Positions 9,542 to 62,763 of a stretch of DNA of 64,000 bases are shown here, piece after piece (positions within the stretch are counted from its first letter, which is position 1; each line of letters begins with the position of its first letter). The stretch is taken from the NCBI RefSeq assembly GCF_006345805.1, contig NC_043020.1, positions 30,132,001-30,196,000 of the forward strand. Direction: 5' to 3'. This stretch comes from Octopus sinensis (taxonomy: Eukaryota). The notes under the pieces were generated by a model. It did not search any database and was not told the origin of the DNA. It saw only the letters and a list, made by a program, of their open reading frames with translations. A program made the translations under genes and the position numbers.

Positions 9542-9615
<74 letters not shown>

Positions 9616-9644
9616 GTTGTATGTATGTATGTATGTATGTGTCG

Positions 9645-12200
9645 CCTGTCCTTCCTCCTGCTTTTCCCACCTTCTTCTCCTCTCTGCCGCCTCTCTATGC
9701 TCCAAACACGCTACGCTTCATTATCCATTTGAATCAACTCTTCCATCAATTTCTTTCTGATACCAAACTTCGTAAACTCCAATCACTCTTCCATTCCACC
9801 CTACCCGACGCCACTACCCCAACTCCTCCACCACCCTTCTCCCCTCCCGATAGGCTCCATCCACCCACACCTAACCCCACTGCCCCTCCCTACAACCCCT
9901 TCTCCCTCCCTCCCGTTAGGCTCCATCCACCTACACCTAACCCTACTGCCCCGCCCACCACCCCACACACACCTCCCCAATCCCTCCCCCTCAGACCTCC
10001 ACGAGACCTACCACCCCTCCTACTTCTATTCACCCACACCACCCCTTCTCCACTTCCGTCTGTTGTTACCATTCCCCCCGATCTTCCCCTCTCTGCGGCT
10101 GAACGCTCCGTCCTTGGTAGGGGTCTGCGTTTCATCCCCCTCACTCCATCCTGTAAGGAATTCCAAACGCGAGTTGATGTCCACAGCTTTGTGCGCCGTG
10201 TCCGGTTGGGGGCGCATTACCACGACTCGCCACCCACACCCAACGAAGAGGACGACTGCTTCACTGGCCTGGGCCGCCGACCATCCCCGTGGACGCCTGC
10301 CCCTGGCCAGATCCTAGCAGTGGATCTTTTCGCGGGCGCTTGTCAGCGTGCATTGGAGCGGTTCAACTTCTCCAGGCGCCAACGCCGCCTCAACATCTCC
10401 CCGGCTGAGCTCTTGGCTCTTCGTTCCCTCCAACGGCGCGCTGACATTATCATCAAACCGGCTGACAAGGGTGGAGCTGTAGTGGTGTGGCGCGCGGACC
10501 TCTATAGGGCCGAGGCTTTCCGCCAACTCAATGACACCTCCTTCTATTCCCCTCTGCCCTCTAACCCCACACGTAGCTACCAACAGACGGTATCCTCTAC
10601 TGTCCAAGACCTCATCTCGTCCTCCCGTCTCCCCCGCACCGCATCCAACCTAATTGTGCGAACCCCACCATTTACTTCCTCCCCAAAATCCACAAACCCA
10701 ACAACCCTGGCCGCCCCATCGTCTCCGCCTGTAACTGCCCCACGGAGCTCATCTCTAAATACCTCGACCGTGTCCTTGCCCCCCTAGTGGCATCTCTTCC
10801 CTCCCACATCCACGATACCAACCATGCTCTCCGGCTTTCAACTCTTCTCCTTTCCTCCCGCTCCTCCAAAATCCTTTTACTATGGACATCCAAAGCCTCT
10901 ATACTGTTATCCCTCACCACGAAGGACTGCAGGCCCTTCGACACTTTCTTGACCTCCGCTCTAACCCTGTACCTGACATCTCCACACTCATTCGTCTGGC
11001 CGAACTTGTCCTTACTCTGAACTGCTTCTCGTTCGCGGGCGAGTTCTACTCAGGTCTCGGGAGTGGACATGGGAACGCGAATGGGCCCCAACTATGCGAA
11101 CCTGTTCGTTGGCTATGTTGAGACCCAAATATTCTCTAATTTCACTGGTCCCACTCCTGAACTATATGGTCGTTATATTGACGACATTATCGGTGCCACC
11201 TCACTCTCACTCCCGCGAACATCTAGATTCCTTCCTCTCTTTCATCCAATCTTTCCATCCAGCCCTCCACTTCACTTCCACTATCTCCAACACCTCTGTC
11301 TCCTTCCTCGACATTTCGGTTAGCATTCTTCACTCCACTCTTACCACCTCCATTCACTACAAACACACAGACTCACACTCATACCTCAACTTCTCTTCCT
11401 CCCACCCAGAACACAGCAAGCTTTCCATCCCCTATTCCCAATTCCTCCGTCTACGTAGGCTCTGTAGTGACGACCATGACTTTGAGACTCAGTCTCAACG
11501 TATGGCTCACCACTTCACCCTACGTGGATACCCCCTCACCACTATCCACACCGCCCTTGCCAGAGCACGGTCCGTGGACCGTGTATCTGCTCTCTCTCCC
11601 CGAACCCGCCCTGTAGTCTCCCGCCTCCTTTTTCCCCCCTCACTTACCACCCCACGACCCTACGTCTCCAACGCACCATTCTTCGAGCTTTCCGTCATCT
11701 CCAGTCCGACCCGTCCACTTCACACCTCTTCCCTAACCGACCCCTCCCCTCTTTCAAACGAGCCACAACCTTCGAGACCTTTTGGTCCATAGCTCCTTCC
11801 CTGACCCTACCTCCCAACCCGGCTCGTTCCCCTGCTCCCGCCCACGTTGCCGCACTTGCCCTTACCTCTCCAACACCACCCGCCTCACTAGCACCCACCA
11901 TCGACCCTATCCCATCATCCACTCCTTCACCTGCACCTCCAGCAATATTATCTATTGCATCTCTTGCTCTCTCTGCAATTCCTTGTACAATCGGACAAAC
12001 GGGACGCCGCTTGGCTGACCGGTTCGCGGAACACCTTCGTGACATCCACCTTGCGAACGACACACCGGTCTCACGCCATTTCCGCTCCACCGGTCACTCC
12101 TTGCAACACCTATCTGTGTTCGGTTTGTCCTTACACAGAGGCCATCCGGATTCCCGTTTGCGCCGTGAACAGAAATTAATCTCTCTCTTCGCTCTTATAC
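9645..12200 (+). mobile_element. Penelope-like retroelement (PLE #2): nearly complete RT plus Cys-rich linker plus GIY-YIG ORF, broken by several frameshifts
   Basis: Motifs IIKPADKG, PKIHK..GRPIV, MDIQSLYT, MGTRMGPNYANLF, RYIDD, VSFLDI, SIPYSQFLRLRRLCS, CSRPRCRTC, CTSSNIIYCISC..C and DRFAEHLRDI across ORFs 9606-10787, 10882-11121, 11063-11323, 11094-11792, 11782-12018 and 12011-12520. Confidence 0.93.
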
Positions 12201-12900
12201 GCCATTTGGTCTCAACTCTCCCCCCTCCTCATCTAACCCCCCTCCTCACCTATCCTTTCTCCCCCCCCCCCACTTCTTCAGTCCTTCATCCTTTCGCCCC
12301 CCTACTCCCCTTCCCTTCTTCCCTCTTTCTCCCTCCCTCTTCCCTTCCCTCTGCTCCCTCACTCCCTCTCTCCCCTTCTCCCTCTTTCCTCCTTCATCCC
12401 CCCCTCCTCCCCTTCCTCCTCCCCATCCTCTCCTCTTCCCCCTTCTCCTCCCCCTCTTCTTCCCCTCCCCTTCCCCCCCTTTCTCCCCTCCCCCCCTATT
12501 CTCCTCACTACACCACATGACTTTACACATCACATCACATATGATGTGCCATACTAATACACACACCAACTAATACATACTAATACGTACTAATACATAC
12601 TAGTACATACTAATACTTACACACCAACCCTATACATACACACGTCCAGACCCCGCATACGCACTTATACTCTCCTCACACACACACACACCTATACATA
12701 CCAATACGTACTAATACATACTAATACATACTAATACATACACCAACCCCATACATACGCACGTCCAGACCAATCCTACGCACTAATACTCTCTCATACA
12801 CACACACACACACACCCTTATACATACTAATACATACACCAACCCTATACATACACACATCCAGACCCCTCCCACGCACTTTTAGCTGGTCCCTCAACCC
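12200..12900 (+). repeat. C/T-rich tract (12200-12510) plus catactaatacatac-type minisatellite; probable 3' UTR of PLE #2
   Basis: Almost purine-free tract followed by repeated atactaatac and acacaccaaccc..gtccagacc units. Confidence 0.65.
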
Positions 12901-39041: not shown

Positions 39042-40169
39042 ATGTGGAGCGTTGATGTTGATTGTCACCAATCCTCCTCCTCCTCACCACCACCGCCGCC
39101 GCCACCACCGCCGCCACCCCCGCCACAAGATGGCACCATGACTAATTACAGTGGCATGAGCCCTTCCAGCTCGGAGCCAACCTCGACAATGCGCATGGTC
39201 AACAGCAAAGGCAAGTCTCTCAACTGCAATTTCTGCGGAAAGTCCTTCCTCTACAGCTCCCACCTTGCCATGCACAAACGCATTCACACTGGTGAGAAGC
39301 CGTTTTCCTGCGACTTCTGCAGAAAGACATTTGCTTATTCATCGCATCTGAAGATGCATGAACGACTGCATACCGGGGAGAAACCGTTCTCCTGCGAATT
39401 CTGTTCAAAGGCTTTTAGTTATTCCTCTCATTTAAAGATGCATAAACGGACACACACGGGCGAAAAGCCGTTTCCGTGTGACTTCTGTGAAAAGACTTTC
39501 TCATATTCTTCGCACTTATCCATGCACAGACGAGTGCACACAGGCGAGAAGCCGTTCACTTGCCAGTTCTGCAACAAGACCTTCAGCTATTCCTCACACC
39601 TCAGAATACACCAAAGAACACACACAGGGGAAAAGCCATTTGTGTGTAATTTCTGTGGATCTGCCTTCGCTCTTTGTGGAACTCTTGTGAAACACAAGAG
39701 AAAGCATGCCAACGCTGCCGACCCGGACTCGGTCGGAATGTCTGGCAGTCAGATGTCTGTCGCCGCAGATAATAAACAACCCATGTACACGACCTGTTCT
39801 AATGGCAGTTGCGGCAGTCTTTGTGTGGCTGCGACAACCTGCTGTGGTGGTGGGGACACCAGCGTTGCCAGCTGCTGCGCTGCTGTCGGCGGCGGCTGCA
39901 ATGCTTCCAGAAGTCGGATAATGGAACAGAACGAGAACACTCGGGAAGCTCTGGCCGTAGCGTCCGAAATAGGAGTCGGCATCAGCATGGCCGCTGAGGC
40001 TGGGGTCAACGTGAAGAGTTTCGGCAAGACACCATCACAGATGGTAAGGAACCATTTACACGGACACGGGCATGCACATGGACACAGCCACGGACACGGA
40101 CACGCGCATAGCCATGGACATAACCATGGACACGGGCATGGAGTTCGTGTGGACAATACACGCCATTGA
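39042..40169 (+). CDS. Intronless C2H2 zinc-finger protein, 375 aa: poly-Pro N-terminus, 6 fingers with TGEKP linkers, Cys-rich segment, His/Gly-rich tail
   Basis: Six CxxC-x12-HxxxH units joined by TGEKP; intact ATG-to-TGA ORF with higher GC than the flanks. Confidence 0.95.
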   Translation: MWSVDVDCHQSSSSSPPPPPPPPPPPPPQDGTMTNYSGMSPSSSEPTSTMRMVNSKGKSLNCNFCGKSFLYSSHLAMHKRIHTGEKPFSCDFCRKTFAYSSHLKMHERLHTGEKPFSCEFCSKAFSYSSHLKMHKRTHTGEKPFPCDFCEKTFSYSSHLSMHRRVHTGEKPFTCQFCNKTFSYSSHLRIHQRTHTGEKPFVCNFCGSAFALCGTLVKHKRKHANAADPDSVGMSGSQMSVAADNKQPMYTTCSNGSCGSLCVAATTCCGGGDTSVASCCAAVGGGCNASRSRIMEQNENTREALAVASEIGVGISMAAEAGVNVKSFGKTPSQMVRNHLHGHGHAHGHSHGHGHAHSHGHNHGHGHGVRVDNTRH

Positions 40170-47751: not shown

Positions 47752-49003
47752 CAGCTGACCACCATCAGTTTGTGCCGGTCGCCGTCGAGAAGTCAGGTGT
47801 TCTCGGACTCCGCTAAATCGGAATACTGGCGGCCCTTCTGATGAATGAGACTCACGGGGTGGAGTGGCTGTGGCAGCAAGGGTCGGAAACGACCACGGGA
47901 TGCAGTCGGATATGTTATTTGTCCCGGAGTGCGCGGCCCATTGCTCCTTCCCCCTCCATCTTCGGCTGCTTAATTCCGCCCGCCGCTTTTTTTATTACTC
48001 TTTCTTTGTATTTAAATGTTATTAATAAAATATCTAATAAATGTCTACAGAGAGAGAGAGAGAGAGAGAAAAAAAAGCCCTCAAGTATTGGGGTTCGACG
48101 TAATCATCCACCCGCCACCCGTTCCTCAAGTATAGGTTTTGTACCTATACTTGAAACAGTTTAAAGAAGATGGGTTGACAGAATCGTTAGAGCGCCGGAC
48201 AAGATGTCTTGCGGAATTTCTAGGGGATCTTTACGTTCTGAGTTCAAATTCGGCCGAGGTCAACTTTGCCTTTCATCCTTCTAGGGTCGATAAAATAAAG
48301 TACCAGTGAAACAGAAGAATTGATAGATATAACCCACTAGTTCCCCCCCCCACTCCCCAAATTGTGTCTGTAGTAGTAGTAGTAGTAGTAGTAGTAGTAA
48401 TAGTAGTAGTAGTAAACGAAATAAATTACGTTGAAGGAAAATGACGCTCAAAGATTCAGGTTAGAGAGAGAGAGAGAGAGAAAGAGAGCTTGGCTGTCTT
48501 TTACATAAAACTAACAATGTTGAGCTACGAACAGGAATTCCTGGTGAAGTTAAGAGATAACAAAACCGTTCTCCGGACGCCTCTTGGCTTGCATTTAAAT
48601 CTGGCGTACATGTTATAAAGGATTGAAGAATCGCGTTCCTGCGTGAGGCTGTTTGTTGAAGAAAAGCAAAACTGCTAAATTTGAATTCATTAACAGAAGA
48701 ACAAGCAAGGAACAAACTATATATCGACCAAAAAACACAAAACGGTAGACAGAAAAATGCGAAAACAATCAAATGAAAAACAGTTACGGATTACCAAAAC
48801 AACCATCTAGAAGTTGAATAATAAACAACCAAGCTTTCTCTTATCTATATATCTATATATATATACATATATATATTTGAGTGATAGAGAGAGGGGGGAA
48901 TATATATATGTATATATATATAGACATATAAACACATTTAGTTTTTAAACTAAAAAAAATAATAAAATAAGAGAGACACTTATATAAAATAAAAGATAAC
49001 AGT

Positions 49004-50662
49004 ATGAATAACAGTGGTACAGCCCATGCTGGAACTGACTTCGAAAGTCACAAGAGAAATTCTAGAAATAAACGGTCGTCGAAACGAAACTCAAATCAGT
49101 ATTTCTTTAAAGATTCGAAAAAAAACAACGAAGTCCCCCAAAATCTTTGCGGTACACACCAGAATGTCAACCAACAAAATCAAAAACGAAGAGACAATAT
49201 GAAAATTCAAATGAACGAATATTTTCCAAATTCTGCGCATAATATTCAAACAATGCCAATATATTCTTCTCCTGCATCAAACGAGGGGATGCTTTCACCA
49301 GTCATGGAGTTTGCCAATTCCATGACCCCACCGACACACACAGCGCCTCCTGCCGGAGACCAAATGATGATGAACCCCAATCAAGTGATTACCTATTCAG
49401 CCCCTGGTCAGTGGATCCAGCAAACTACATTACTGCCAAACCAGTCGACCCTGCCCGTACAGCATTATCATATGGCCCCTGCGACTATCAACAGTCCACC
49501 GTTTTACCCGCATTCCATTTCTAACCCTAATGCTATGAGTTACATGCATTCATGTGGCGATTCTCTTCCACCCCAGAAATCAATGTCGGTGCCAGCCATG
49601 CAGAGTTATAAAATGGAACAAAGAAGACAACAGTCTCTCATCCAGATAGTCAACCCGAACACCGGTGAAGATATTTCAAAAGAGATTTTGACTAATCGAA
49701 TGGATGAAGACTTACAGGAATTGGATTCGTTCAGAGACAATCAAATCAATTTACTGGCAAAAGTAACGGAAACAACAACCACACACGAATCTCAGAATCC
49801 CGTTCCAGGTGTAATGGTTCCATATCTAATCCATCCGATTCATTTGCAAGAGGTTAACCCAGTGCAACAGATAATGTTTGAATCTCATATACCGCTCTCA
49901 CATACAAGCGAAAATATTCAGGAACAGTCTACGACCCAAACACAAATTGAAATGTTTGACGAAGAACAGGAGAAACCCATCAATTGCAATAACGGAAATA
50001 TTTCGGTTCAAACAGTTATTGGCACTGTAAAAGAAGATCCGGTCCATCGACCAGCCTTGCCGCAGTCCGAAAACATGATGAAAACCGTGTCAACGGAAAA
50101 CCAGTCGACGCAAGAAAGTAGCGAAATGCTACCGAATAAAATTGTGGATTCTGTCGAAGAATTTGTCCCCCAAAATACAGTTGAGAATGAAACGCTGGCA
50201 CCAGAAGAAGTCAATTCGGTGCAGCGGCATAATCAGGTTTCTATAGTGTATCCGGTTCTAAATAAGTGTCATAGTAAAATGTCGCAGACAAATGCTATGG
50301 ATACAAGCACTGCGGCCCAGGCTCGTACCGAAAACCACCCCATTGAATCTAATTCAGTTGAACAACCGTTTCAGGTGGGCCTGCCATCATACGCTGAGAT
50401 GACCCAACATCAAATTCCTTCTATGACCCCTTTGCAAGTGACTCAAGTTCAAACTCCGCTTCTACCAGCCGTTTCGGACCCTAACCAATTACAAACACGC
50501 CAGCCAGTTGTTGCATACCTACCTGTTGTATTTTATTTAGAGGGAACAATTCCAAATGGAGATCCCATCGCAGGACCCCGTTCGTTCCAAGGGTCTGCCC
50601 ACCCCCAGCCTCTATCTGCACACGGCGCAAAACCAACACAAGGCATTCAAGTGGATATCTAA
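49004..50662 (+). CDS. Intronless 552-aa Gln/Pro/Thr-rich protein similar to the eIF4G N-terminal region, including a PABP-binding-like motif; ends without eIF4E-binding or MIF4G domains
   Basis: Intact long ORF. [24 protein letters not shown] resembles eIF4G [38 protein letters not shown] resembles AGSQVMMIPSQISY (human eIF4G1 recalled from memory). Confidence 0.75.
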   Translation: [552 protein letters not shown]

Positions 50663-53600
50663 AAAAAAAAACAGAAAGAAAGAAAAGAAACAAAAACGGA
50701 TGTAATATTTCGCAAATTGCTTATTTTCAGTTTATAATGAACTAATCTAGATTTAAGAAAGAAAGAGAGAACGAAAGAAAGAATGAATGGAAAGGAGGAA
50801 AGACTAAAAGCTTTTTCACGGCAACGGAGCAGAATTTCGAATCCTGGGGATAAAACGTTTGAAAGAAAAAAAATTCAGTTTATAACAAAGGATTACAACC
50901 GTAAAAAGATATCGGAGCAGGGAAGACGGAATTTTCAATTGAAATTTTTTTTCCTTGTTGACTCGTTCGAGATGTTTCTTTATGAAACACATTTTTTAAA
51001 GATTATTTTGAAAATTATTTTAAAACAAGGAACATAGCTTTAAAGTACATAACTTTAAATGAAAAATGACAAATCTTATAAACTCTATAAGAGATGCTTG
51101 TCTGTAAGAGAAAAGGAAAAATCAGGAAAAACTTATATCGACAGAAGAAAAAAAAAATTGTGTAAAATTGGAACATATTTATTGTTGGGATGTTTTTGTG
51201 CATTTTTTTATTCTTAATTTTTGTTTCTTTTATTTTTCTATTTTTTTTGCAATAAGCCTGAATATTTTAGTGACATTTTTTTCTCAAAGAAATTCTCAAG
51301 ATTATTATTATTATTGTTGTTGTTGTTGTTATACTGCGGTATAAAATTGCAATGGAAAATAAAGTTAATTCGATATTATATATTTATAAATTTTGAAAGG
51401 CTTCTAAAAAATCTAAATTGTCAAAAGAGAAAGAGAAAAAAAATTTAACGGCTGTTAAATAATTTCCTAGTTTACCGTTTCTTTAAAATTATTTACTTAT
51501 ATTAAGGTCTAGAGTTCAAATTAAACTCAGTATTCCGTTTTTATTGTTGCTTAAGCTTCCAGGTCAGCCCCGTCTGAGCAGAAACATTTATGGTCAAAGT
51601 CGTTCCACATGTGACCATCTTTGATTCAGACAGCAAATCAAAGAACACATTCGTTAGAATTTGTCTCAAATTTTGGCACAAGTTCAGCAATTTTTTTTGT
51701 GTGTGTGAGTTAAAATTTCGCAGAGGTCGGTTTTGCCTTTCATGCTTTTGGGGTCGATAAATTAAGTACCAGTTGAACACTGGGGTTGATGTAATTGACT
51801 CATCTCCACTCCCAAATTGCTACCCTTGTGAAGCTGGACGAAATGCTTGGCGGCATTTCGTCCGTCTTTACGTTCTGAGTTCAAATGCCGTCGAGGTCGA
51901 CTTTGCCTTTTATCCTTTCAGGGTCGATAGATTAAGTACCAGTGATTCATTGGGGTCGATCTAATCGACTTGTCTCCTCCCCCAAAATTTCAGGCCTTCT
52001 GCCTATAGCAGAAAGGATTATATTATTTTCATACTTATTTATGCCTTTCTTCTCCTTAAAGTAAGGCTAAGGTTTTGGAGCGGAAAAGGGCACAAATTTG
52101 GAGGGGGGTGGGAGCTAAATATGGAACTTTTTCAAAAGTCGTAATTCCCATTGTATGAAAGACAAGAATACAATATACATGGCGAGTATCACTCAGTCTC
52201 CATTTTCTTTTCCTTCTCCATGAACTAATGGTTATTCCTAAATTCCACCAAAATAAGTTTAATCTCCCTCTAGTCTACATTATTTAACATTTCCTTTCCT
52301 TTTTGAAGAAGGAAGAGTGAAGTTGGGAGGATAATTGGTTGCTGTGTCTAGAAGCGTTACTTCATAGAGGTTCCTTGGTTGGCTTGCACTGTCGACAACA
52401 TAACGCCTTCCCATTCGATGTAAAGGTGACCATCTCCACTTGAGGAGCTAAATTTAGAGCTGCAAATTAATCAAAATCTTCGCCATTATATAGTTGACAG
52501 GTGAAGGCGGCGAGCTGGCAGAATCGTTAGCACGCCGGGAGAAATGCTTAGCGGCGTTTTTTTCCAGCTTCACGTTCTGAGTTCAAATTCCGCCAAGGTC
52601 GACTTTGCCTTTCATCTTTTTGGGGTTTGATAAAATAAGTACCAGTTGTAATCGACTCCTTTACAATTAATGGCCTTGTGCTAAAATTTGAAAGCATTAT
52701 GTAATACTGGTCGTGTCTGTAGAGGAGTAGGAATTATGCCTTTCGGTATTTGTTTCGGTTCGCTGCATTCTGAGTTCAAATCCCACCAAGGTCAACTTTA
52801 TCTTTCGTCCTTGGTCGATAAATAAAGTACCAGTTCAAAGAAGTGGGTTCGCTTGATACCTCATGGTATTTGCTCTAGTTCTTGGGGATTAGACTTAATC
52901 TGTTGCCCGGTTTAACTCTATCCTCTGGTCCTTGGGGTCGTTTTGGGCAATCCTAGCGTTTGGTGTCTCCCTTATCCGAGTTTTTACAGGCTTATATAGC
53001 AGATATAAAAGTGTTGTTCCCGTAAAAGCGTCACCCACGACGGATGGCCTCCTCGCCCTAGCTACACTACCGCTTTAGGGTCCGAATTGACTGTTTAGAG
53101 GATTCAGAGCAAGACTCCGGTTTAAAGATAACTTCCTTCTTGCCGTCTCGGAGGCCCTCAAAAAGTTCCGAGTAACGCTTTTAGGGGTGGAGCGGCATTT
53201 TTGGGTCCTCTGTGTGGGTCTGTACAAGCACGAGGGTGGCCGTCAGGATGGGGAACTCGAAGGTTGCCTTCCCTCCACCCGGTGCCATAAACTTTAGCTC
53301 CAGCCCTGAGGTGCTGCCCTTACAGTCCTCATTAAACGGTAGAAATAGGGGCACTGCGAGGGAAAGTATATCAGAGAAGAGTAAGGTTGGGAAATGCAGC
53401 TAATTTTTTTTTAAATCGTTGAAACTTGTGATGCTGCAATAAATATTTCTGAGTTCAATCCTAAATCAACGATCAGGCAGCTTCATGTTCCTTGACTAAG
53501 CTGTATAAAAGTAGAGCTAACACACTTGTAGTGGTTTATTTTAATATCTTTACTTAATTGAGACTAAACCCGGAATAAAGAAAATTGTTGAATAATTTTT

Positions 53601-56207: not shown

Positions 56208-56607
56208 GGTTTTATATTCTCACATTCTGTAACAAAATAAGCAACAAAACACAAGTTTATCTCCATCTAAACTTGCAATGATCACAGCATCTGGTTTTTC
56301 CACACAGTTTTACATATGCTGTGTCTATTATATCATCTGTTCCTATACACAACTTCTTGCAAACATTTAGTGTTTGTTTCTCATCTCCTTTTGCTTGTTA
56401 TGTCTGGCATCTATTATTAAGTAAAGCCTTGGATCTGCTCTTGCACCAGTTATCACAGGCAGCAATGAAATTGTTGCATCTGTCGTTATGTCAGTTGTTT
56501 TAACCTTTTAACCTTCACATCTACAATGACATTGCTATTGCATCTTTTGTTGTATATGCTACATCTGTTGTTATATCTGTTACTACATTTGTTGTGGTAG
56601 CTATCAT

Positions 56608-56859
56608 TAAATCTTTTGATACATCTGCTGTTCTGTTGTTGCTATACATGTTATTACGTGGAGCACGTAATAAATCTTTTGATACATCTGCTGTTCTGTT
56701 GTTGCTATACATGTTATTACGTGGAGCACGTAATAAATCTTTTGATACATCTGCTGTTCTGTTGTTGCTATACATGTTATTACGTGGAGCACGTAATAAA
56801 TCTTTTGATACATCTGCTGTTCTGTTGTTGCTATACATGTTATTACGTGGAGCACGTAA
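56608..56859. repeat. Perfect 63-bp tandem repeat x4 spanning a SINE 5' junction
   Basis: Unit taaatcttttgatacatctgctgttctgttgttgctatacatgttattacgtggagcacgtaa. Confidence 0.95.
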
Positions 56860-57076
56860 GATTGTGGTTTCAATTCCTGGACCAGGCGACGCGTTGTGTT
56901 CTGGAGCAAAACACTTCATTTCACGTTGCTGCAGTCCACTCAGCTGGCAAAAATGAGTAACGCTGCGATGGACTGGCGTCCCGTCCAGCTGGGGAACACA
57001 TATGCCATAGAAACTGGGAAACTGGGCCCATGAGCCTGGCTAGGCTTTAAAAGGGCACATTTATTTATTATTATAT
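56847..57076 (+). mobile_element. tRNA-derived SINE with a deleted head and a 13-bp TSD
   Basis: ggagcacgt|aagattgtggtttcaattcctggacc..; TSD tacatgttattac at 56834-56846 and 57077-57089. Confidence 0.8.
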
Positions 57077-57616: not shown

Positions 57617-57873
57617 CTGTAAAAGATAATTGATACTGCAATAAATTATACATTATTAGGAAATGTATGAACATCACACAATCTCATTTCCTTAGTCTTA
57701 AATATTCAACCTTTCCAGGAATAATTGTTTGTTATTAATAGTTAAATCACACAGTTTGCAGTAGAAATTTATAGTGGTTCATACGGACTGGTGAAAGGCA
57801 AAAGGGAAGCGAGAGGGAACCCTAGGACAGGAGGATTAGGTGGATAAAGGATAGAATACAACAGCAATCATAC

Positions 57874-57957
57874 CTTTTTCACAGCAACAATTCCATAACA
57901 GCGAGGAGATGTGACAGGGTCAAACAATTGTAAGAGAGAGACATCTTTGATGGATTC
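57874..57957 (-). CDS. METTL25: METTL25 exon (ESIKDVSLLQLFDPVTSPRCYGIVAVKK); unspliced it ends V* at 57868
   Basis: Conserved LFDPxxSPRCY C-terminal motif; acceptor ctcattag|, donor |gtatga. Confidence 0.9.
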
Positions 57958-58304
57958 CTAATGAGAGAAAATGAAGGAAGACTTGGGTTTAAACAATAAT
58001 AAAACCACATACTACAATACAGCATCATCATCAACATCATTAATGTCATCATCAACATCATTAATGTCATTATCAACATCATTTTATTGTCCACTTTCCC
58101 ATCTTTTTGCTTGGGTCAAATAGAATTTGCCAAAACAGATTTTCTACGGCTGGGTGCTCTTCCTGTCACCAATCCTCACCTGTTTCTAAGTAAGCTAACA
58201 TTTTCCCCATGACTAGACATGTTTTCATGGGAAACAAGAAACGAAGGATACCACTTGCTGGATAGTGACATTTATTTACAACCATCACACAACACAACAC
58301 ACAT

Positions 58305-58590
58305 TATATATATTCCCTCTCTGTTTGGAGGCACAAGCACTTACACACACGGCAGTAACCTCCACCTACTAAACTCAATTGCAAAGCTTCAGTTGGCCAG
58401 AGACTATAGCGGAAGACACTTGCCCAAGGTGCCATGCAGTGACACTGGCACTTTGGGCAAGTGTCTTCTGCTATAGCTTTGGGCTGACCAAAGCTGTGTA
58501 ATTGAATTTAGTAGGTGGAACTTACTGCCATGTGTGTACATATGTGTGTAAGTGCTTGTGTTTCCTAACAGAGAGGGAATGTATATAATA
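58305..58590. repeat. Foldback of two inverted SINE 3' halves within a METTL25 intron
   Basis: Arms of ~140 bp, e.g. gaagacacttgcccaaggtgcca / tggcactttgggcaagtgtcttc; centre ~58443. Confidence 0.75.
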
Positions 58591-58611
58591 TATATATATA
58601 AAAGTTCTAGC

Positions 58612-59600
58612 AACACTACTCCTCAACAGACTTGTTCTGTTCCTTACCGAAAATCATCTTCCAGAAAGCTAATGTGGTTTCAGAGCCAACAGGAGCACAA
58701 CAGATAGGGTTTACGTTCTCAGGTAGCCCCAGGAAAAGTGCCAGGAGCAAAACAAACCACTTTATGTAACATTTGTCGATCTGACGAAAGCGTTCGACAC
58801 TGAGCAGATCAGAGCCATTCCCCATCAACAACAGTGTGAAGCAGGGCTGTGCCCTAGCACCAACTCTCTTCAGCACGATGCTCAAGCAGACCACTGTAGA
58901 CCTCGATGCTGAAGACGGCGTCTACATCAGGTACGGTCTGGACGGCAGTCTTTTCAACCTCCAGCACCTACAGGTCCACACCAAGATACAAGAGCAAGTG
59001 ATCTAGAACCACCTCTTTGCAGATGCTGCTGCTGCACTTGTTGCACACACAGAAAGAGTCCTGCAGCACATCACATCCTGCTTTGCAGAGGCCACCCCAG
59101 CTCTTTGGGCTGGAAGTAAGCTTGTAAAAGACTGAATTCCTACACCAACCAGCTCCTCAGGAAGAGTACAAGATGCCCCACATCACCATTGCTGAAACAG
59201 AACAGAAATTGGTACAGCAGGTCATTTGTCTTGGATATATCAGTTCATCAGATGAAAGTATCAACAAAGAAATTGACAAGACTTGCAAAGGCAAACAAAA
59301 CATTTGGCAAACTGCACAAACGTGTGTGGAATAATAAACATCTTAAGATCAGCAGAAAAGTCAGAGTCTACAGGGCCATCATCCTCACGACGCTCCTATA
59401 TGGCTCTGAGTCCAGGGTCCCCTACCACTGTCATCTCAGGCTCCTTGAACGTTTTCACCAACACTGCCTTTGTACCATCCTCAACATCTACTGGAGTGAC
59501 TACATCACCAACACTGAAGCCCTCAAGTGAGCAAAGGTCACCAGTTTGGAAGCCATTTTATTTGCGACATGATTACGTTGGGCAGGACACCTGTTCTAGG
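58612..59600 (+). mobile_element. RTE/BovB-like LINE RT fragment, antisense in a METTL25 intron
   Basis: GFRANRST, FVDLTKAFDT, VKQGCALAPTLF, LFAD, VYRAIILTTLLYGSE, LRWAGH. Confidence 0.9.
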
Positions 59601-59609
59601 CACACTCAC

Positions 59610-59756
59610 CTGTTCCAGTAGGTAATAAATCCGGTCCAATGCAATGAGTGCTTCGATACATGGGGCCAACGCAGACTTTACTTGGAAAAAAGCAGCAAGT
59701 TTCTTTTTGTCCTCTTCATATTTTACCAAATAATCCTGAACCATTTCTTCAGAGAT
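59610..59756 (-). CDS. METTL25: METTL25 exon (ISEEMVQDY..LAPCIEALIALDRIYYLLEQ)
   Basis: Matches the METTL25 motif LAPCIETLILLDRLCYLKEQ; ttttcag| and |gtgagt; 49 codons. Confidence 0.92.
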
Positions 59757-59951
59757 CTGAAAATTAAGAAATAAGGGAAGACATAAGCATACTCACAAAG
59801 ACAGACAGACAGACAGACAAAAACACACAAACATGCACACTACAGCTAACCATACCACTGCAGTCTTCTCTCTTACACAAAACAGCTGATTTCTCTAATC
59901 AAATAATTCTATGAAGAAATTAATGAAGTATACTCAAAAAGTAGAAATAAC

Positions 59952-60134
59952 CTTTTCAGAAGAACGGTCCAACTTCTGGAAAGCCATTTCCACATAATCA
60001 TAAAACGAAGAACATTTGCTGGCTAATTTTCTTAATTTGATGGAATTCTTCAAAGAATTTTGTTCCTGCTTGGATAAAGTATCAATGAAGATCTTCTGAA
60101 GGAGTGCTCGTTGGAATAGAGATTCTCCTGTTAA
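59952..60134 (-). CDS. METTL25: METTL25 exon (LTGESLFQRALLQ..KCSSFYDYV..SSEK)
   Basis: Matches ESLFYRAVLQ and SKCSSFLDYV; AG/GT boundaries; 61 codons. Confidence 0.92.
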
Positions 60135-60739
60135 CTGGATAAGAAAAAAAACAAAAATCGAGGAAAAATAATTGAAGAATATGACAAACTTAGGGTAATC
60201 ATGAATTATTAACAAACATGTTATTGCATTGATTGGGCAAAAACTCTCCGTAGACATCCTGATGGAGTCATCTGTTGGAAAAGCAAACTACTTTTACTAT
60301 TTTTAGATATGCTATCTTAACATTTGTTGGCCATTTCTAGCACCGGCAACAAGTTGGTAACCTCAACTAACTTAACAATCAAGTAATAACCACAGAATCA
60401 TAGAATCACAATAAAGCTCTTTAATACCAATATATATTATGTATATATATGTACATCCTGTGTGTGTATGTGTGCAGATATATATATATATATATATATA
60501 CATACACACAGTTATTGTTAACACTAATCTGGTAAAATTAAGAGAGTTACACATCTTTCAAAATTTGACAATAAAATTTAATTAAGTAACTTACATTATA
60601 TAACTAATAATCAATAATTGTGTTAATTAAAAGCACATTAATGTAAGAAAATATTATATAAACAATGTGTCCTATTTTGCTATATATATATATATGTATG
60701 TATATGTATATATACATATATGATGATGATATATATATG

Positions 60740-60843
<104 letters not shown>

Positions 60844-60894
60844 TGAGAGGAAAAGTATGTCTATGAGTGTGTGCATGCACACACACACATGTAC

Positions 60895-61019
60895 CTTGCT
60901 AGAAGATATGATCCTGTTCACAGACTGGCAGGCCAGATTTTTTGTATTTTGACCCAAATGAAACTTCATCTTCCTCAGAATGGAACTGACAGGGAAACCA
61001 TATTCACTTTGAGCAGCAC
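60895..61019 (-). CDS. METTL25: METTL25 exon (GAAQSEYGFPVSSILRKMKFHLGQNTKNLACQSVNRIISSSK)
   Basis: Conserved GFP..LAC motif; phase 1 in, phase 0 out, consistent with neighbouring exons. Confidence 0.88.
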
Positions 61020-61427
61020 CTTAGAAATATATGATAAAAATGGTTTAGGGATTTTTGTTTTGAAAGATTCTGATGTGAAATCCTGTGTTGAAACAGATTT
61101 TGTTATGTGTCAGGATGGTCGTTCTTTGTTTGTATTTGTTTTTGCCAAACACATGCATTTGTATGTATTTGTTCTCCTCTTTAGAAGGAACTAAACTGAA
61201 TAGGAGGAGACACACGGGATGGAGAACCACTGAAGAGGTCACTTCCAGATAATGGACATCAAATAAGAACAATAATAAGTCCGAAGTGAAAAGCGAATAT
61301 ATACAGTGTGTGTGTTTATTTGGCAAGAATATAAAATGTGACCATCTCGAGGACAATAATGAAAATAGTCCTAAATGAATAATATCAAACAAATACACAC
61401 ACACATAATATATATATATACATATAT

Positions 61428-61549
61428 CCACCGCATACAGCAGTATTAAGTTATCGGATGTGCCAATTTCCATATCAAATGCATTCCAGGAATGTATTTA
61501 ATATGGAAAAATGGCATATCCAATAACTTAATACTGCTGTATGTGGTGG
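61428..61549. repeat. ~60-bp-arm imperfect palindrome in a METTL25 intron
   Basis: ccaccgcatacagcagtattaagttatcgg..cattcc-a-ggaatg..ccaataacttaatactgctgtatgtggtgg. Confidence 0.85.
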
Positions 61550-62204
61550 CTATATAAACAATGTGTATGTCTCAATATGAAATTTTGCAGCAAAAATCAG
61601 TTACATGTTTTTTAATAATCCATGATTACCCTAAGTTTGTCATATTCTAGAATTTCTGTAGAAAATAATGTAAAATTGCACTGCTAACACTGGAGGACAT
61701 GGTTTTGACTTATAAAACAATTTACTATATTTTATAGCATAATATGGTTGCATAACGAAATACCACGTGCCTACAAGTCATTAACATCAAGATCAGCTTT
61801 GCCTTTCGTCCTTTTGGGGGTGGGGGTCAATAAAATAGGTACCAGTTGAACACTGGGGTTGATGTAATTCACTTAACCCCTTCCCCAATATTTTGGGCCT
61901 TGTGTCAATAGTAGAAAGGATTATTATTATTATAATTAGGGCGGCTACCGGGCAGAATCATTAGCACACCAGACAAAATGCTTAGCGACATTTTGTCCAT
62001 CTTTACGCTCTGCCAAGATTCTGCCAAGGTCAACTTAGCCTTTCATCCTTGTTGTTGTTGTTACCATTATCATTGAACTTGAGTAAGTAATCGAGTAGCA
62101 TCCTGCCCACTTGTGCTTCTTGTAGAAAGAATTATTATTGTTATTATTATCATTATTATTATTAAAGTAAAAACAAACATAATAAATAAAATCGCAGGAC
62201 TGAC

Positions 62205-62763
62205 CGTTGGGATCGAATTCCTCTGTTAAAAGATGATAACAGCATGAGACATTACAGAGGAGATGAGCCGCAGGATTCTGAGAGAAAAACCGAAGCGCCG
62301 TTGGGCAGAGATTGCCACAAGTATGAAGGCCTGCGACAAGCAGGTTGCTGCTGTCGCCCTGGGAACCGGCGTCAGCTTCACATTTATCATGTTCTGCAAT
62401 CAGCTGTAAGATATTGGTGTCAGAGTTTACATACGTGGTAAATGGACAGTAAAACCCCCTTGGTTCCTTCTCAGTGGTCGTTGCAACATATTTCTGAAGA
62501 TTACCACCACAGTCACCATTATTCTGATTCTGATTCTGTATTTTCAGAGATTCTTCTTCGTTTGGAACTGGTTGATTCTGATAAGAATTTTGGCTAAGGG
62601 TAAATTTTTTAATAAGTCCTGACCACTGTTTTTTCAAAATCTTTGCTCTCTTATTCGCTCCTGATGTATTCTGGTCAGCAGAATCAATACCAAAGACTTT
62701 TAAATCGTAACTGAAAGCAAGTTGGGTTCCAAGATAGCCTTTGCCACTGCCCAAGTCAACAAT
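62205..62763 (-). CDS. METTL25: METTL25 exon with the SAM-binding motif
   Basis: IVDLGSGKGYL, VFGIDS, GLHTCGNL, NVSCCYHLL.EEF; ccacag| and |gtcagt. Confidence 0.95.

What the first reader, a model, noticed from the sequence alone, without database searches (positions are those of the whole stretch)
49004..50662. Intronless, stand-alone eIF4G N-terminal paralogue: a possible PABP decoy or translational regulator
Seen: an intact 552-codon single-exon ORF followed by an A-run. It has a PABP-binding-like motif (~49613-49690) and an upstream [15 protein letters not shown]..PFYP segment collinear with the eIF4G N-terminus. I found no YxxxxL-phi eIF4E-binding motif and no MIF4G domain before the stop. 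Established: the eIF4G N-terminal motif binds PABP RRM2 to close the mRNA loop, and this region is multi-exonic in vertebrate eIF4G. Inference: a retained retrocopy or truncated paralogue that could compete for PABP like PAIP2, or recruit PABP to condensates; potentially an undescribed cephalopod translational control factor.
Basis: partly seen in the sequence, partly recalled or inferred. Interest (0 to 1): 0.8.

Follow-up and report, generated by a model that had tools for sequence, protein, structure and literature searches.

The report
Octopod stand-alone eIF4G N-terminus-like gene
Octopuses and the argonaut carry a conserved, intronless gene for a disordered protein whose best-conserved stretch resembles the part of translation factor eIF4G that binds the poly(A)-binding protein, without the rest of eIF4G, so it may bind poly(A)-tail complexes, but this is untested.

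Summary
Window 49004-50662 (+) is an intact 552-codon ORF with an in-frame stop 36 nt upstream. It has no Pfam domain, no YxxxxL-phi motif and no MIF4G.

It is a real gene. Full-length orthologues exist in O. vulgaris, a third octopus and Argonauta hians, with the same start, the same stop and the same neighbours. dN/dS is 0.05-0.08 along the whole length.

Residues about 109-231 align collinearly with vertebrate eIF4G1 residues about 75-199, including the PABP-binding motif:
- BLASTP 39.7 bits, pairwise E 2e-6.
- hhalign probability 82%, E 1e-5.
- Shuffle z 8.2.

That motif is the longest invariant block of the protein. AlphaFold predicts disorder throughout.

No eIF4G exon lies elsewhere in the window, so the ORF is not an exon of eIF4G. 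The A-run is not a retrocopy poly(A) relic, and no retrocopy hallmark survives.

PABP binding and a decoy role remain inference. Only 2 of 6 basic motif residues are kept. The human PABP-only eIF4G1 fragment does not repress bulk translation. I could not retrieve the canonical octopus eIF4G, so the parent gene is unresolved.

Verdict: a new eIF4G-derived, lineage-restricted variant of moderate interest.

The parts
49004..50662 (+). Single-exon CDS of 552 aa plus stop. It encodes a predicted intrinsically disordered protein.
   Evidence: ORF. Orthologues run end to end. dN/dS is 0.05-0.08. The in-frame stop lies 36 nt upstream and there is no GTRAGT donor inside. AF2 mean pLDDT is 30.8.
49328..49696 (+). 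Segment (aa 109-231) homologous to vertebrate eIF4G1 residues about 75-199.
   Evidence: BLASTP 39.7 bits, E 2e-6. hhalign probability 82%, E 1e-5. BLASTP against fish fragment P0015, E 3e-4. Shuffle z 8.2 and 6.6.
49613..49690 (+). eIF4G-type PABP-binding-like motif (aa 204-229, [26 protein letters not shown]). Its core lies in the longest invariant block of the protein (aa 210-236, 49631-49711).
   Evidence: The only PDB match of the motif peptide is the eIF4G peptide 1LJ2_C. Invariant block. Lowest local dN/dS, 0.023 for codons 185-276. AF2 short helix at 225-230.
49049..49123 (+). N-terminal Lys/Arg-rich cluster (aa 16-40, [25 protein letters not shown]). It may be an NLS or an RNA-contacting patch; this is inference.
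   Evidence: Sequence. Invariant block 21-36. Codons 1-80 have dN 0.125 with dS saturated against Argonauta.
49808..49885 (+). Invariant block aa 269-294 ([26 protein letters not shown]), a candidate linear motif of unknown partner.
49982..50041 (+). Invariant block aa 327-346 ([20 protein letters not shown]), a candidate linear motif of unknown partner.
50498..50539 (+). Invariant block aa 499-512 ([14 protein letters not shown]). It contains the only relaxed Yxxxx[LMF]-phi match, YLPVVFY.
48594..48784 (+). Non-coding block conserved with Argonauta (70% over 210 nt), upstream of the ATG. It may be a promoter or 5' UTR; this is inference.
50663..51363 (+). Putative 3' UTR up to the first AATAAA, 696 nt after the stop. 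Short blocks just after the stop are conserved with Argonauta.
   Evidence: The third-octopus contig is collinear to 51327.

Best explanation
This is a genuine, stand-alone, intronless protein-coding gene of octopods. It encodes a 552-aa intrinsically disordered protein made of short invariant motifs joined by variable linkers. Residues about 109-231 descend from the N-terminal region of eIF4G, and the most conserved element is the eIF4G-type motif that in eIF4G1 docks on RRM2 of poly(A)-bound PABP.

The proposed mechanism is inferred, not shown. The protein binds PABP on poly(A) tails through this motif. It has no eIF4E-, eIF4A- or eIF3-binding module, so it cannot bridge to the cap or recruit ribosomes. 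It would instead occupy the eIF4G site on PABP and use its other invariant motifs and its basic N-terminus to bring other partners or RNA contacts to poly(A) mRNPs. That makes it an adaptor or modulator of selected mRNAs, affecting their stability, storage or translation, rather than a global shut-off factor.

Shown here: the ORF, its orthologues, purifying selection, synteny, similarity to eIF4G1, absence of the other eIF4G domains, and predicted disorder. Inferred: PABP binding, competition with eIF4G, and the adaptor role.
For: A real gene:
- Orthologues of 554-556 aa share the start and the 'VDI*' stop.
- dN/dS is 0.081 against a third octopus (dS 0.345) and about 0.05 against Argonauta. 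All six segments are below 0.15.

Stand-alone:
- An in-frame stop lies 36 nt upstream (99 nt in Argonauta) and there is no donor-like site inside.
- The neighbours are the same in Octopus and Argonauta: a C2H2 zinc-finger gene upstream and a Methyltransf_32 gene on the opposite strand downstream.
- The ORF is the only conserved plus-strand coding block between them.
- tblastn with full-length eIF4G1 and eIF4G3 hits only this ORF in the 64 kb.

eIF4G relationship: with database confirmation of the vertebrate sequences.

Motif constraint:
- The 27-aa invariant block 210-236 is the longest in the protein.
- Every hydrophobic or turn position of the human motif is retained, as I213, I215, P218, N219, G221, D223, I224, E227, I228 and L229.

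Disorder.

Literature: eIF4G 41-244 and 84-294 bind PABPC1 RRM1-2 directly through a short N-terminal motif (PMC10546976; PMC4174440).
Against: - No binding or expression data exist.
- Only R207 and R208 remain of the six basic residues of human [10 protein letters not shown]. Alanine substitution of these residues weakens or abolishes PABP binding in human eIF4G1 (PMC4174440; PMC13081929).
- The similarity is too weak to surface in database-wide searches. The region is rich in Pro, Gln and Asn, so some of the score could come from composition, although composition-adjusted BLAST and block shuffles remain significant.
[quoted passage not shown] A simple decoy effect may therefore be small.
- The basic N-terminus could be an NLS, which would place the protein in the nucleus.
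Confidence: 0.45

Rival explanations
1. A lineage-restricted disordered protein whose eIF4G-like stretch is convergent or coincidental, a short linear motif in a P/Q/N-rich context. It does not bind PABP. It works elsewhere, for example in the nucleus via its basic N-terminus, through its other invariant motifs.
For: - Database-wide searches find no eIF4G at E<=10 or E<=0.001.
- hhalign probability is only 82%, and the fish eIF4G1 block-shuffle test gives 4 of 1000.
- Most basic residues of the motif are lost.
- There are an NLS-like cluster at 16-40 and several other equally invariant blocks with no eIF4G counterpart.
Against: - Three collinear elements (QxMMxPxQ..Y, PxFYP and the PABP motif) occur with near-identical spacing in one gapped alignment. 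Pairwise E is 2e-6, z is 8.2, and 0 of 1000 shuffles reach the score.
- The only PDB match of the motif peptide is the eIF4G peptide.
- The motif is the most constrained block of the protein.
Confidence: 0.25
2. Gene fission. In octopods the PABP-binding N-terminus of eIF4G is encoded separately from a canonical eIF4G that lacks it. This protein then supplies, or has taken over, that function in trans.
For: The ORF carries only the N-terminal module. The ORF profile matched no octopus protein besides its own orthologues at more than about 30-41 bits, so the canonical octopus eIF4G N-terminus is not closely similar to it.
Against: There is no motif in the ORF that would link it to eIF4E, eIF4A or eIF3, or to a truncated eIF4G. 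I could not examine the canonical octopus eIF4G, so this is neither supported nor excluded.
Confidence: 0.07
3. A global PABP decoy and translational repressor of the PAIP2 type. It would sequester PABP from eIF4G and shut down poly(A)-dependent translation.
For: The eIF4G-type motif is present without any ribosome-recruiting module.
Against: In human cells the PABP-only eIF4G1 fragment does not repress global synthesis, and repression by the 2A N-terminal fragment needs eIF4E binding as well (PMC13081929). The ORF has no PAM2 motif and no similarity to PAIP2.
Confidence: 0.15
4. An exon of a longer eIF4G gene, or a decaying retro-pseudogene.
For: The ORF is intronless and is followed by an A-run.
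Against: - Start and stop are conserved in four genomes, and an in-frame stop lies just upstream.
- There are no eIF4G exons in the 64 kb, and the downstream neighbour is on the other strand.
- dN/dS is 0.05-0.08 with no frameshift.
- The A-run is not conserved.
Confidence: 0.03

Closest known systems
N-terminal region of vertebrate eIF4G1 (human residues about 75-199, including the PABP-binding motif at about 174-199)
   Same: The two align collinearly at 30-35% identity, sharing (A/S)GxQxMMxPxQ..Y, PxQxY, PxFYP and RR..I.I..PN..G.DI..EI(L/M). Both regions are disordered, and the motif ends in a short helix.
   Different: The ORF has no eIF4E-binding motif, MIF4G, MA3 or W2 domain. Four of the six basic motif residues are lost. 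It has an extra basic N-terminus and about 320 unrelated C-terminal residues. It is a single exon, whereas the vertebrate region is split by introns, for example between KRERKT and IRIRD, as inferred from read-through fragments.
Caspase-3 N-terminal cleavage fragment of eIF4G1 (N-FAG / casp3-cpN)
   Same: It is an eIF4G piece that retains PABP binding but none of the eIF4E, eIF4A or eIF3 sites. This makes it the nearest functional analogue of what the ORF encodes (PMC13081929).
   Different: It is produced by proteolysis, not by a separate gene. In human cells it does not repress bulk translation. It does not share the ORF's other conserved motifs.
PAIP2 (PABP-interacting protein 2)
   Same: It is a small disordered protein that competes for PABP RRMs and modulates poly(A)-dependent translation (PMC9019252, title and abstract).
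   Different: There is no sequence similarity. PAIP2 uses PAM1 and PAM2 motifs, and the ORF has no conserved PAM2. PAIP2 displaces PABP from poly(A), whereas the eIF4G motif binds PABP that is on poly(A).
Partial eIF4G paralogues DAP5/eIF4G2 and PAIP1
   Same: They are precedents for proteins that carry only part of the eIF4G architecture.
   Different: By established knowledge, they keep the MIF4G core and lack the N-terminus. This ORF is the reverse: N-terminus only.

Membership tests
eIF4G family (eIF4G1/eIF4G3) | MIF4G (HEAT-1) domain that binds eIF4A and eIF3 | tested here: not met
   No Pfam family even at E<=10. tblastn of full-length eIF4G1 and eIF4G3 against the window hits only ORF residues 116-231.
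eIF4G family (eIF4G1/eIF4G3) | Canonical eIF4E-binding motif YxxxxL-phi | tested here: not met
   A regex over four orthologues finds only the relaxed YLPVVFY at 505-511.
eIF4G family (eIF4G1/eIF4G3) | MA3 and W2 C-terminal domains | tested here: not met
eIF4G family (eIF4G1/eIF4G3) | N-terminal PABP-binding motif and flanking N-terminal homology | tested here: met
   This is at sequence level only, and 2 of the 6 basic residues are kept.
PABP RRM2 ligands of the eIF4G type | Direct, motif-dependent binding to poly(A)-bound PABP RRM1-2 | not testable with these tools
   No complex prediction or assay is available. Fused or foreign sequences are not accepted by the structure tool.
PAIP2 / PAM2-containing PABP partners | PAM2 motif (LNxxAxEFxP) that binds the MLLE domain | tested here: not met
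   No regex match. The nearest string, VEEFVP at 384-389, lacks the conserved Leu and Asn, and its Pro is Asp in Argonauta.
Processed retrocopy | Intronless coding sequence | tested here: met
Processed retrocopy | Poly(A) relic at the end of the inserted mRNA, and flanking target-site duplications | tested here: not met
   The A-run abuts the stop codon, is followed by conserved 3' sequence, and is not conserved. The only flanking repeats are dispersed SINE-like copies and A-rich low-complexity sequence.
Processed retrocopy | An identifiable multi-exon parent gene in the same genome | not testable with these tools
   I could not retrieve the canonical octopus eIF4G. The three homology searches returned only the orthologues or short vertebrate eIF4G1 fragments.

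The most novel reading that the evidence does not exclude
Octopods have evolved, from the eIF4G N-terminus, a dedicated stand-alone protein that docks on the eIF4G site of PABP. Through about five further invariant linear motifs it couples poly(A) mRNPs to other machinery such as storage, transport, decay or condensates. This would be a genetically encoded counterpart of the proteolytic eIF4G N-terminal fragment, and a natural tool to separate closed-loop functions from ribosome recruitment.
Probability: 0.3. Interest if true: 0.75.

Novelty: new variant of a known kind. Interest (0 to 1): 0.5.

Why it matters
What the eIF4G-PABP contact is for is again under debate. Recent work reports that it is dispensable for bulk initiation but can be used for repression (PMC13081929). 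A gene kept under strong purifying selection since before the Octopus-Argonauta split, and encoding only the PABP-docking part of eIF4G plus other conserved motifs, would be a natural experiment on that contact. It would show what occupying the eIF4G site on PABP does when no ribosome-recruiting module is attached. It is also an example of a taxonomically restricted gene built from a fragment of a core translation factor. Current annotation lists it only as 'hypothetical protein', and the O. vulgaris model lacks the first 65 codons.

Tried and rejected
- Pfam on the ORF: nothing, even at E<=10.
- phmmer and profile searches of all PDB sequences: one chance VapC hit for the full ORF and nothing for the profile.
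- HMMER profile against 1.84 billion representatives, and the word-index search at E<=10: only the orthologues.
- Third homology search, with a hybrid human/octopod N-terminal profile meant to fish out invertebrate eIF4G N-termini. It returned only short vertebrate eIF4G1 fragments and not even the octopod proteins, so it says nothing about mollusc eIF4G.
- AlphaFold2: no fold (pLDDT 30.8), so I ran no fold search.
- Retrocopy hallmarks: none.
- A hidden eIF4E-binding motif: only YLPVVFY, which has Pro and Val where a helix is needed.
- PAM2: rejected.
- Downstream or upstream eIF4G exons: none.
- Whether the Logan contig from SRR11869390 is RNA or DNA could not be decided. It is collinear with the genome and ends in simple repeats, and the run is not mentioned in the paper library.
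- Resemblances of blocks 288-299 and 333-356 to human eIF4G1 residues 221-300 were judged to be chance, because their order is inverted and BLAST does not report them.

Full report
**1. The observation**

[15 protein letters not shown] (117-131) and PPFYP (165-169) lie upstream. No Pfam family matches, even at E<=10. A regex finds no YxxxxL-phi; only a relaxed YLPVVFY at 505-511, and no PAM2. The description is accurate.

**2. Is it a gene?**

A word-index search of 5.8 billion proteins found two relatives, both called 'hypothetical':
- Octopus vulgaris CAI9740005.1, 490 aa and 99% identical. It is annotated from Met66.
- Argonauta hians GAB1609194.1, 556 aa and 73-75% identical over 100% of the query.

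Cluster look-up added a 554-aa protein from a Logan contig of run SRR11869390. That 2405-nt contig is collinear with window 48912-51327 at 88% identity, so it comes from a third octopus species. The O. vulgaris genome in fact carries the full ORF of 555 codons from the same ATG.

All orthologues begin MN.. and end ..VDI*. Nei-Gojobori estimates:

| Comparison | dN | dS | dN/dS |
|---|---|---|---|
| Window vs third octopus | 0.028 | 0.345 | 0.081 |
| Window vs Argonauta | 0.14 | saturated (pS 0.73) | about 0.05 |

All six 92-codon segments are below 0.15, including the first one, which lies upstream of the annotated O. vulgaris start. The lowest value, 0.023, is for codons 185-276. This is a protein-coding gene under strong purifying selection along its whole length. 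It is not a pseudogene.

**3. Is it stand-alone?**

- An in-frame stop lies 36 nt upstream of the ATG (99 nt in Argonauta). There is no GTRAGT donor in the ORF.
- DNA similarity between Octopus and Argonauta stops at the ATG and fades within about 100 nt after the stop.
- Gene order is the same in O. vulgaris, Argonauta and the window. A single-exon C2H2 zinc-finger gene (window 39042-40169, +) lies upstream, and a Methyltransf_32 gene lies downstream on the minus strand.
- Six-frame peptides of window 40170-62034 were searched against the Argonauta locus. The ORF is the only conserved plus-strand coding block. The conserved blocks at 57871-61020 are minus-strand methyltransferase exons.
No MIF4G, MA3 or W2 exon is found.

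The ORF is therefore not an exon of a full-length eIF4G.

**4. Relationship to eIF4G**

Database-wide searches do not reach eIF4G. An HMMER profile against 1.84 billion representatives, and a profile search at E<=10, returned only the orthologues. Targeted tests are positive:
- BLASTP with composition adjustment gives one gapped alignment of ORF 116-231 with human eIF4G1 82-199: 39.7 bits, 30% identity, pairwise E 2e-6.
P0006 and P0004 are identical over their true parts. P0009 is 'EIF4G1 isoform 15, partial [Pan troglodytes]'. Reptile, bird, frog and fish fragments were also recovered.
- hhalign of the octopod alignment against an alignment of those vertebrate fragments gives probability 82%, E 1e-5, 107 columns and 35% identity, for ORF 109-230.
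- BLASTP against a fish fragment gives E 3e-4.
- The Smith-Waterman score against the database-derived primate sequence is 102. Whole-sequence shuffles give 44.8 +/- 7.0 (z 8.2), and 30-aa block shuffles give 49.8 +/- 7.9 (z 6.6). None of 1000 shuffles reaches the observed score. For the fish sequence, z is 4.9 and 3.7.
- The 38-aa motif peptide, searched against 177,635 PDB sequences, hits only the eIF4G peptide of 1LJ2, at E 1.2 because the query is so short.

I conclude that residues about 109-231 are homologous to the eIF4G1 N-terminus. My estimate is about 0.8, with composition (P, Q and N together 28%) as the main caveat.

**5. Anatomy**

AlphaFold2 with the three-sequence alignment gives mean pLDDT 30.8, which means disorder. 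It predicts only helices 54-73 and 225-230, the latter at the end of the motif.

Conservation among window, third octopus and Argonauta comes in blocks. The longest invariant run is 210-236 ([27 protein letters not shown]), which is the eIF4G-type motif. The other invariant runs are 21-36, 129-141, 190-203, 269-294, 327-346, 423-434 and 499-512.

Compared with human [24 protein letters not shown], the octopod motif keeps every hydrophobic or turn position (I, I, P, N, G, D, I, E, I, L for M). It keeps only two of the six basic residues.

**6. Retrocopy?**

The gene is intronless. The vertebrate counterpart is interrupted by introns, as inferred from fragments that read through exon ends, for example KRERKT|... 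and ...|IRIRDPNQ.

The A-run is not a poly(A) relic. It abuts the stop codon, is followed by 3' blocks conserved in Argonauta, and is itself not conserved. The flanking repeats are dispersed SINE-like copies and low-complexity A-rich strings, not target-site duplications. I could not retrieve the canonical octopus eIF4G, so origin by retroposition, partial duplication or fission stays open.

**7. Mechanism**

From the literature:
- A short N-terminal eIF4G motif binds PABPC1 RRM2.
- Fragments 41-244 and 84-294 bind PABPC1 RRM1-2 directly.
- The KRERK mutant binds more weakly (PMC4174440; PMC10546976).

My best reading, with confidence 0.45, is that the protein docks on PABP through this motif. 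Because it lacks the eIF4E, eIF4A and eIF3 sites, it would act as an adaptor or competitor on poly(A) mRNPs, using its other motifs and its basic N-terminus.

A PAIP2-like global decoy is less likely. In human cells the PABP-only caspase-3 N-terminal fragment does not repress bulk synthesis, and repression by the 2A N-terminal fragment needs eIF4E binding too (preprint PMC13081929). Loss of most basic motif residues, and a possible NLS, also argue for caution.

**8. Novelty and verdict**

No source gives the protein any name other than 'hypothetical', and a paper search combining eIF4G, PABP and octopus returned nothing on such a gene. To my knowledge no eIF4G paralogue consisting of the N-terminus alone has been described. 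DAP5 and PAIP1 are the converse case: they keep the MIF4G core and lack the N-terminus.

The protein fails every defining domain test for eIF4G membership. I therefore file it as a new variant: an eIF4G-derived gene carrying a PABP-motif and restricted to one lineage. Evidence covers Octopus and Argonauta only.

Interest is 0.5. The gene is solidly real and unusual, but its function is wholly inferred.

Noticed in passing
window 49004-49198; L002 upstream of 10001: The public O. vulgaris gene model (CAI9740005.1, 490 aa) starts at Met66. The 65 upstream codons are open in O. vulgaris, conserved in Argonauta and a third octopus, and under purifying selection. The model is probably truncated at its 5' end.
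   Followed up: yes
window 39042-40169 (+): A single-exon ORF of 375 aa with C2H2 zinc fingers (Pfam zf-H2C2_2 5e-46), a poly-Pro N-terminus and a His-Gly-repeat C-terminus. The Argonauta orthologue is much longer (511-543 aa) because of Gln/His and Gly/Ala low-complexity expansions.
   Followed up: partly
window 57871-62754 (-): Exons of a Methyltransf_32-domain gene (Pfam 8.8e-21 for 62038-62754), conserved with Argonauta and convergent with the ORF.
   Followed up: partly
window 48227-48324, 51695-51790, 51864-51960: Three copies (75-87% identical) of a SINE-like element of about 100 nt flank the gene. They are dispersed repeats, not target-site duplications.
   Followed up: partly
window 56521-56919 (-): An ORF made of four tandem copies of a 21-aa unit (LLRAPRNNMYSNNRTADVSKD). 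This is a 63-nt tandem repeat, also seen as 63-nt blocks in the comparison with O. vulgaris. It is probably non-coding satellite.
   Followed up: no
window 9606-12520 (+): A run of Pro-rich ORFs of 393, 232 and 169 aa that look like a degraded mobile element. None matches any Pfam family.
   Followed up: partly
window 48594-48784: A non-coding block conserved with Argonauta (70% over 210 nt). It lies 220-410 nt upstream of the ATG in Octopus but about 1.2 kb upstream in Argonauta, separated by expanded TA-rich repeats. It may be a promoter or 5' UTR.
   Followed up: no
window 50153-50170 (aa 384-389): VEEFVP resembles the EFxP end of a PAM2 motif (PAIP2 has AKEFVP). The Leu and Asn positions are absent and the Pro is Asp in Argonauta, so it is probably not a PAM2.
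   Followed up: yes
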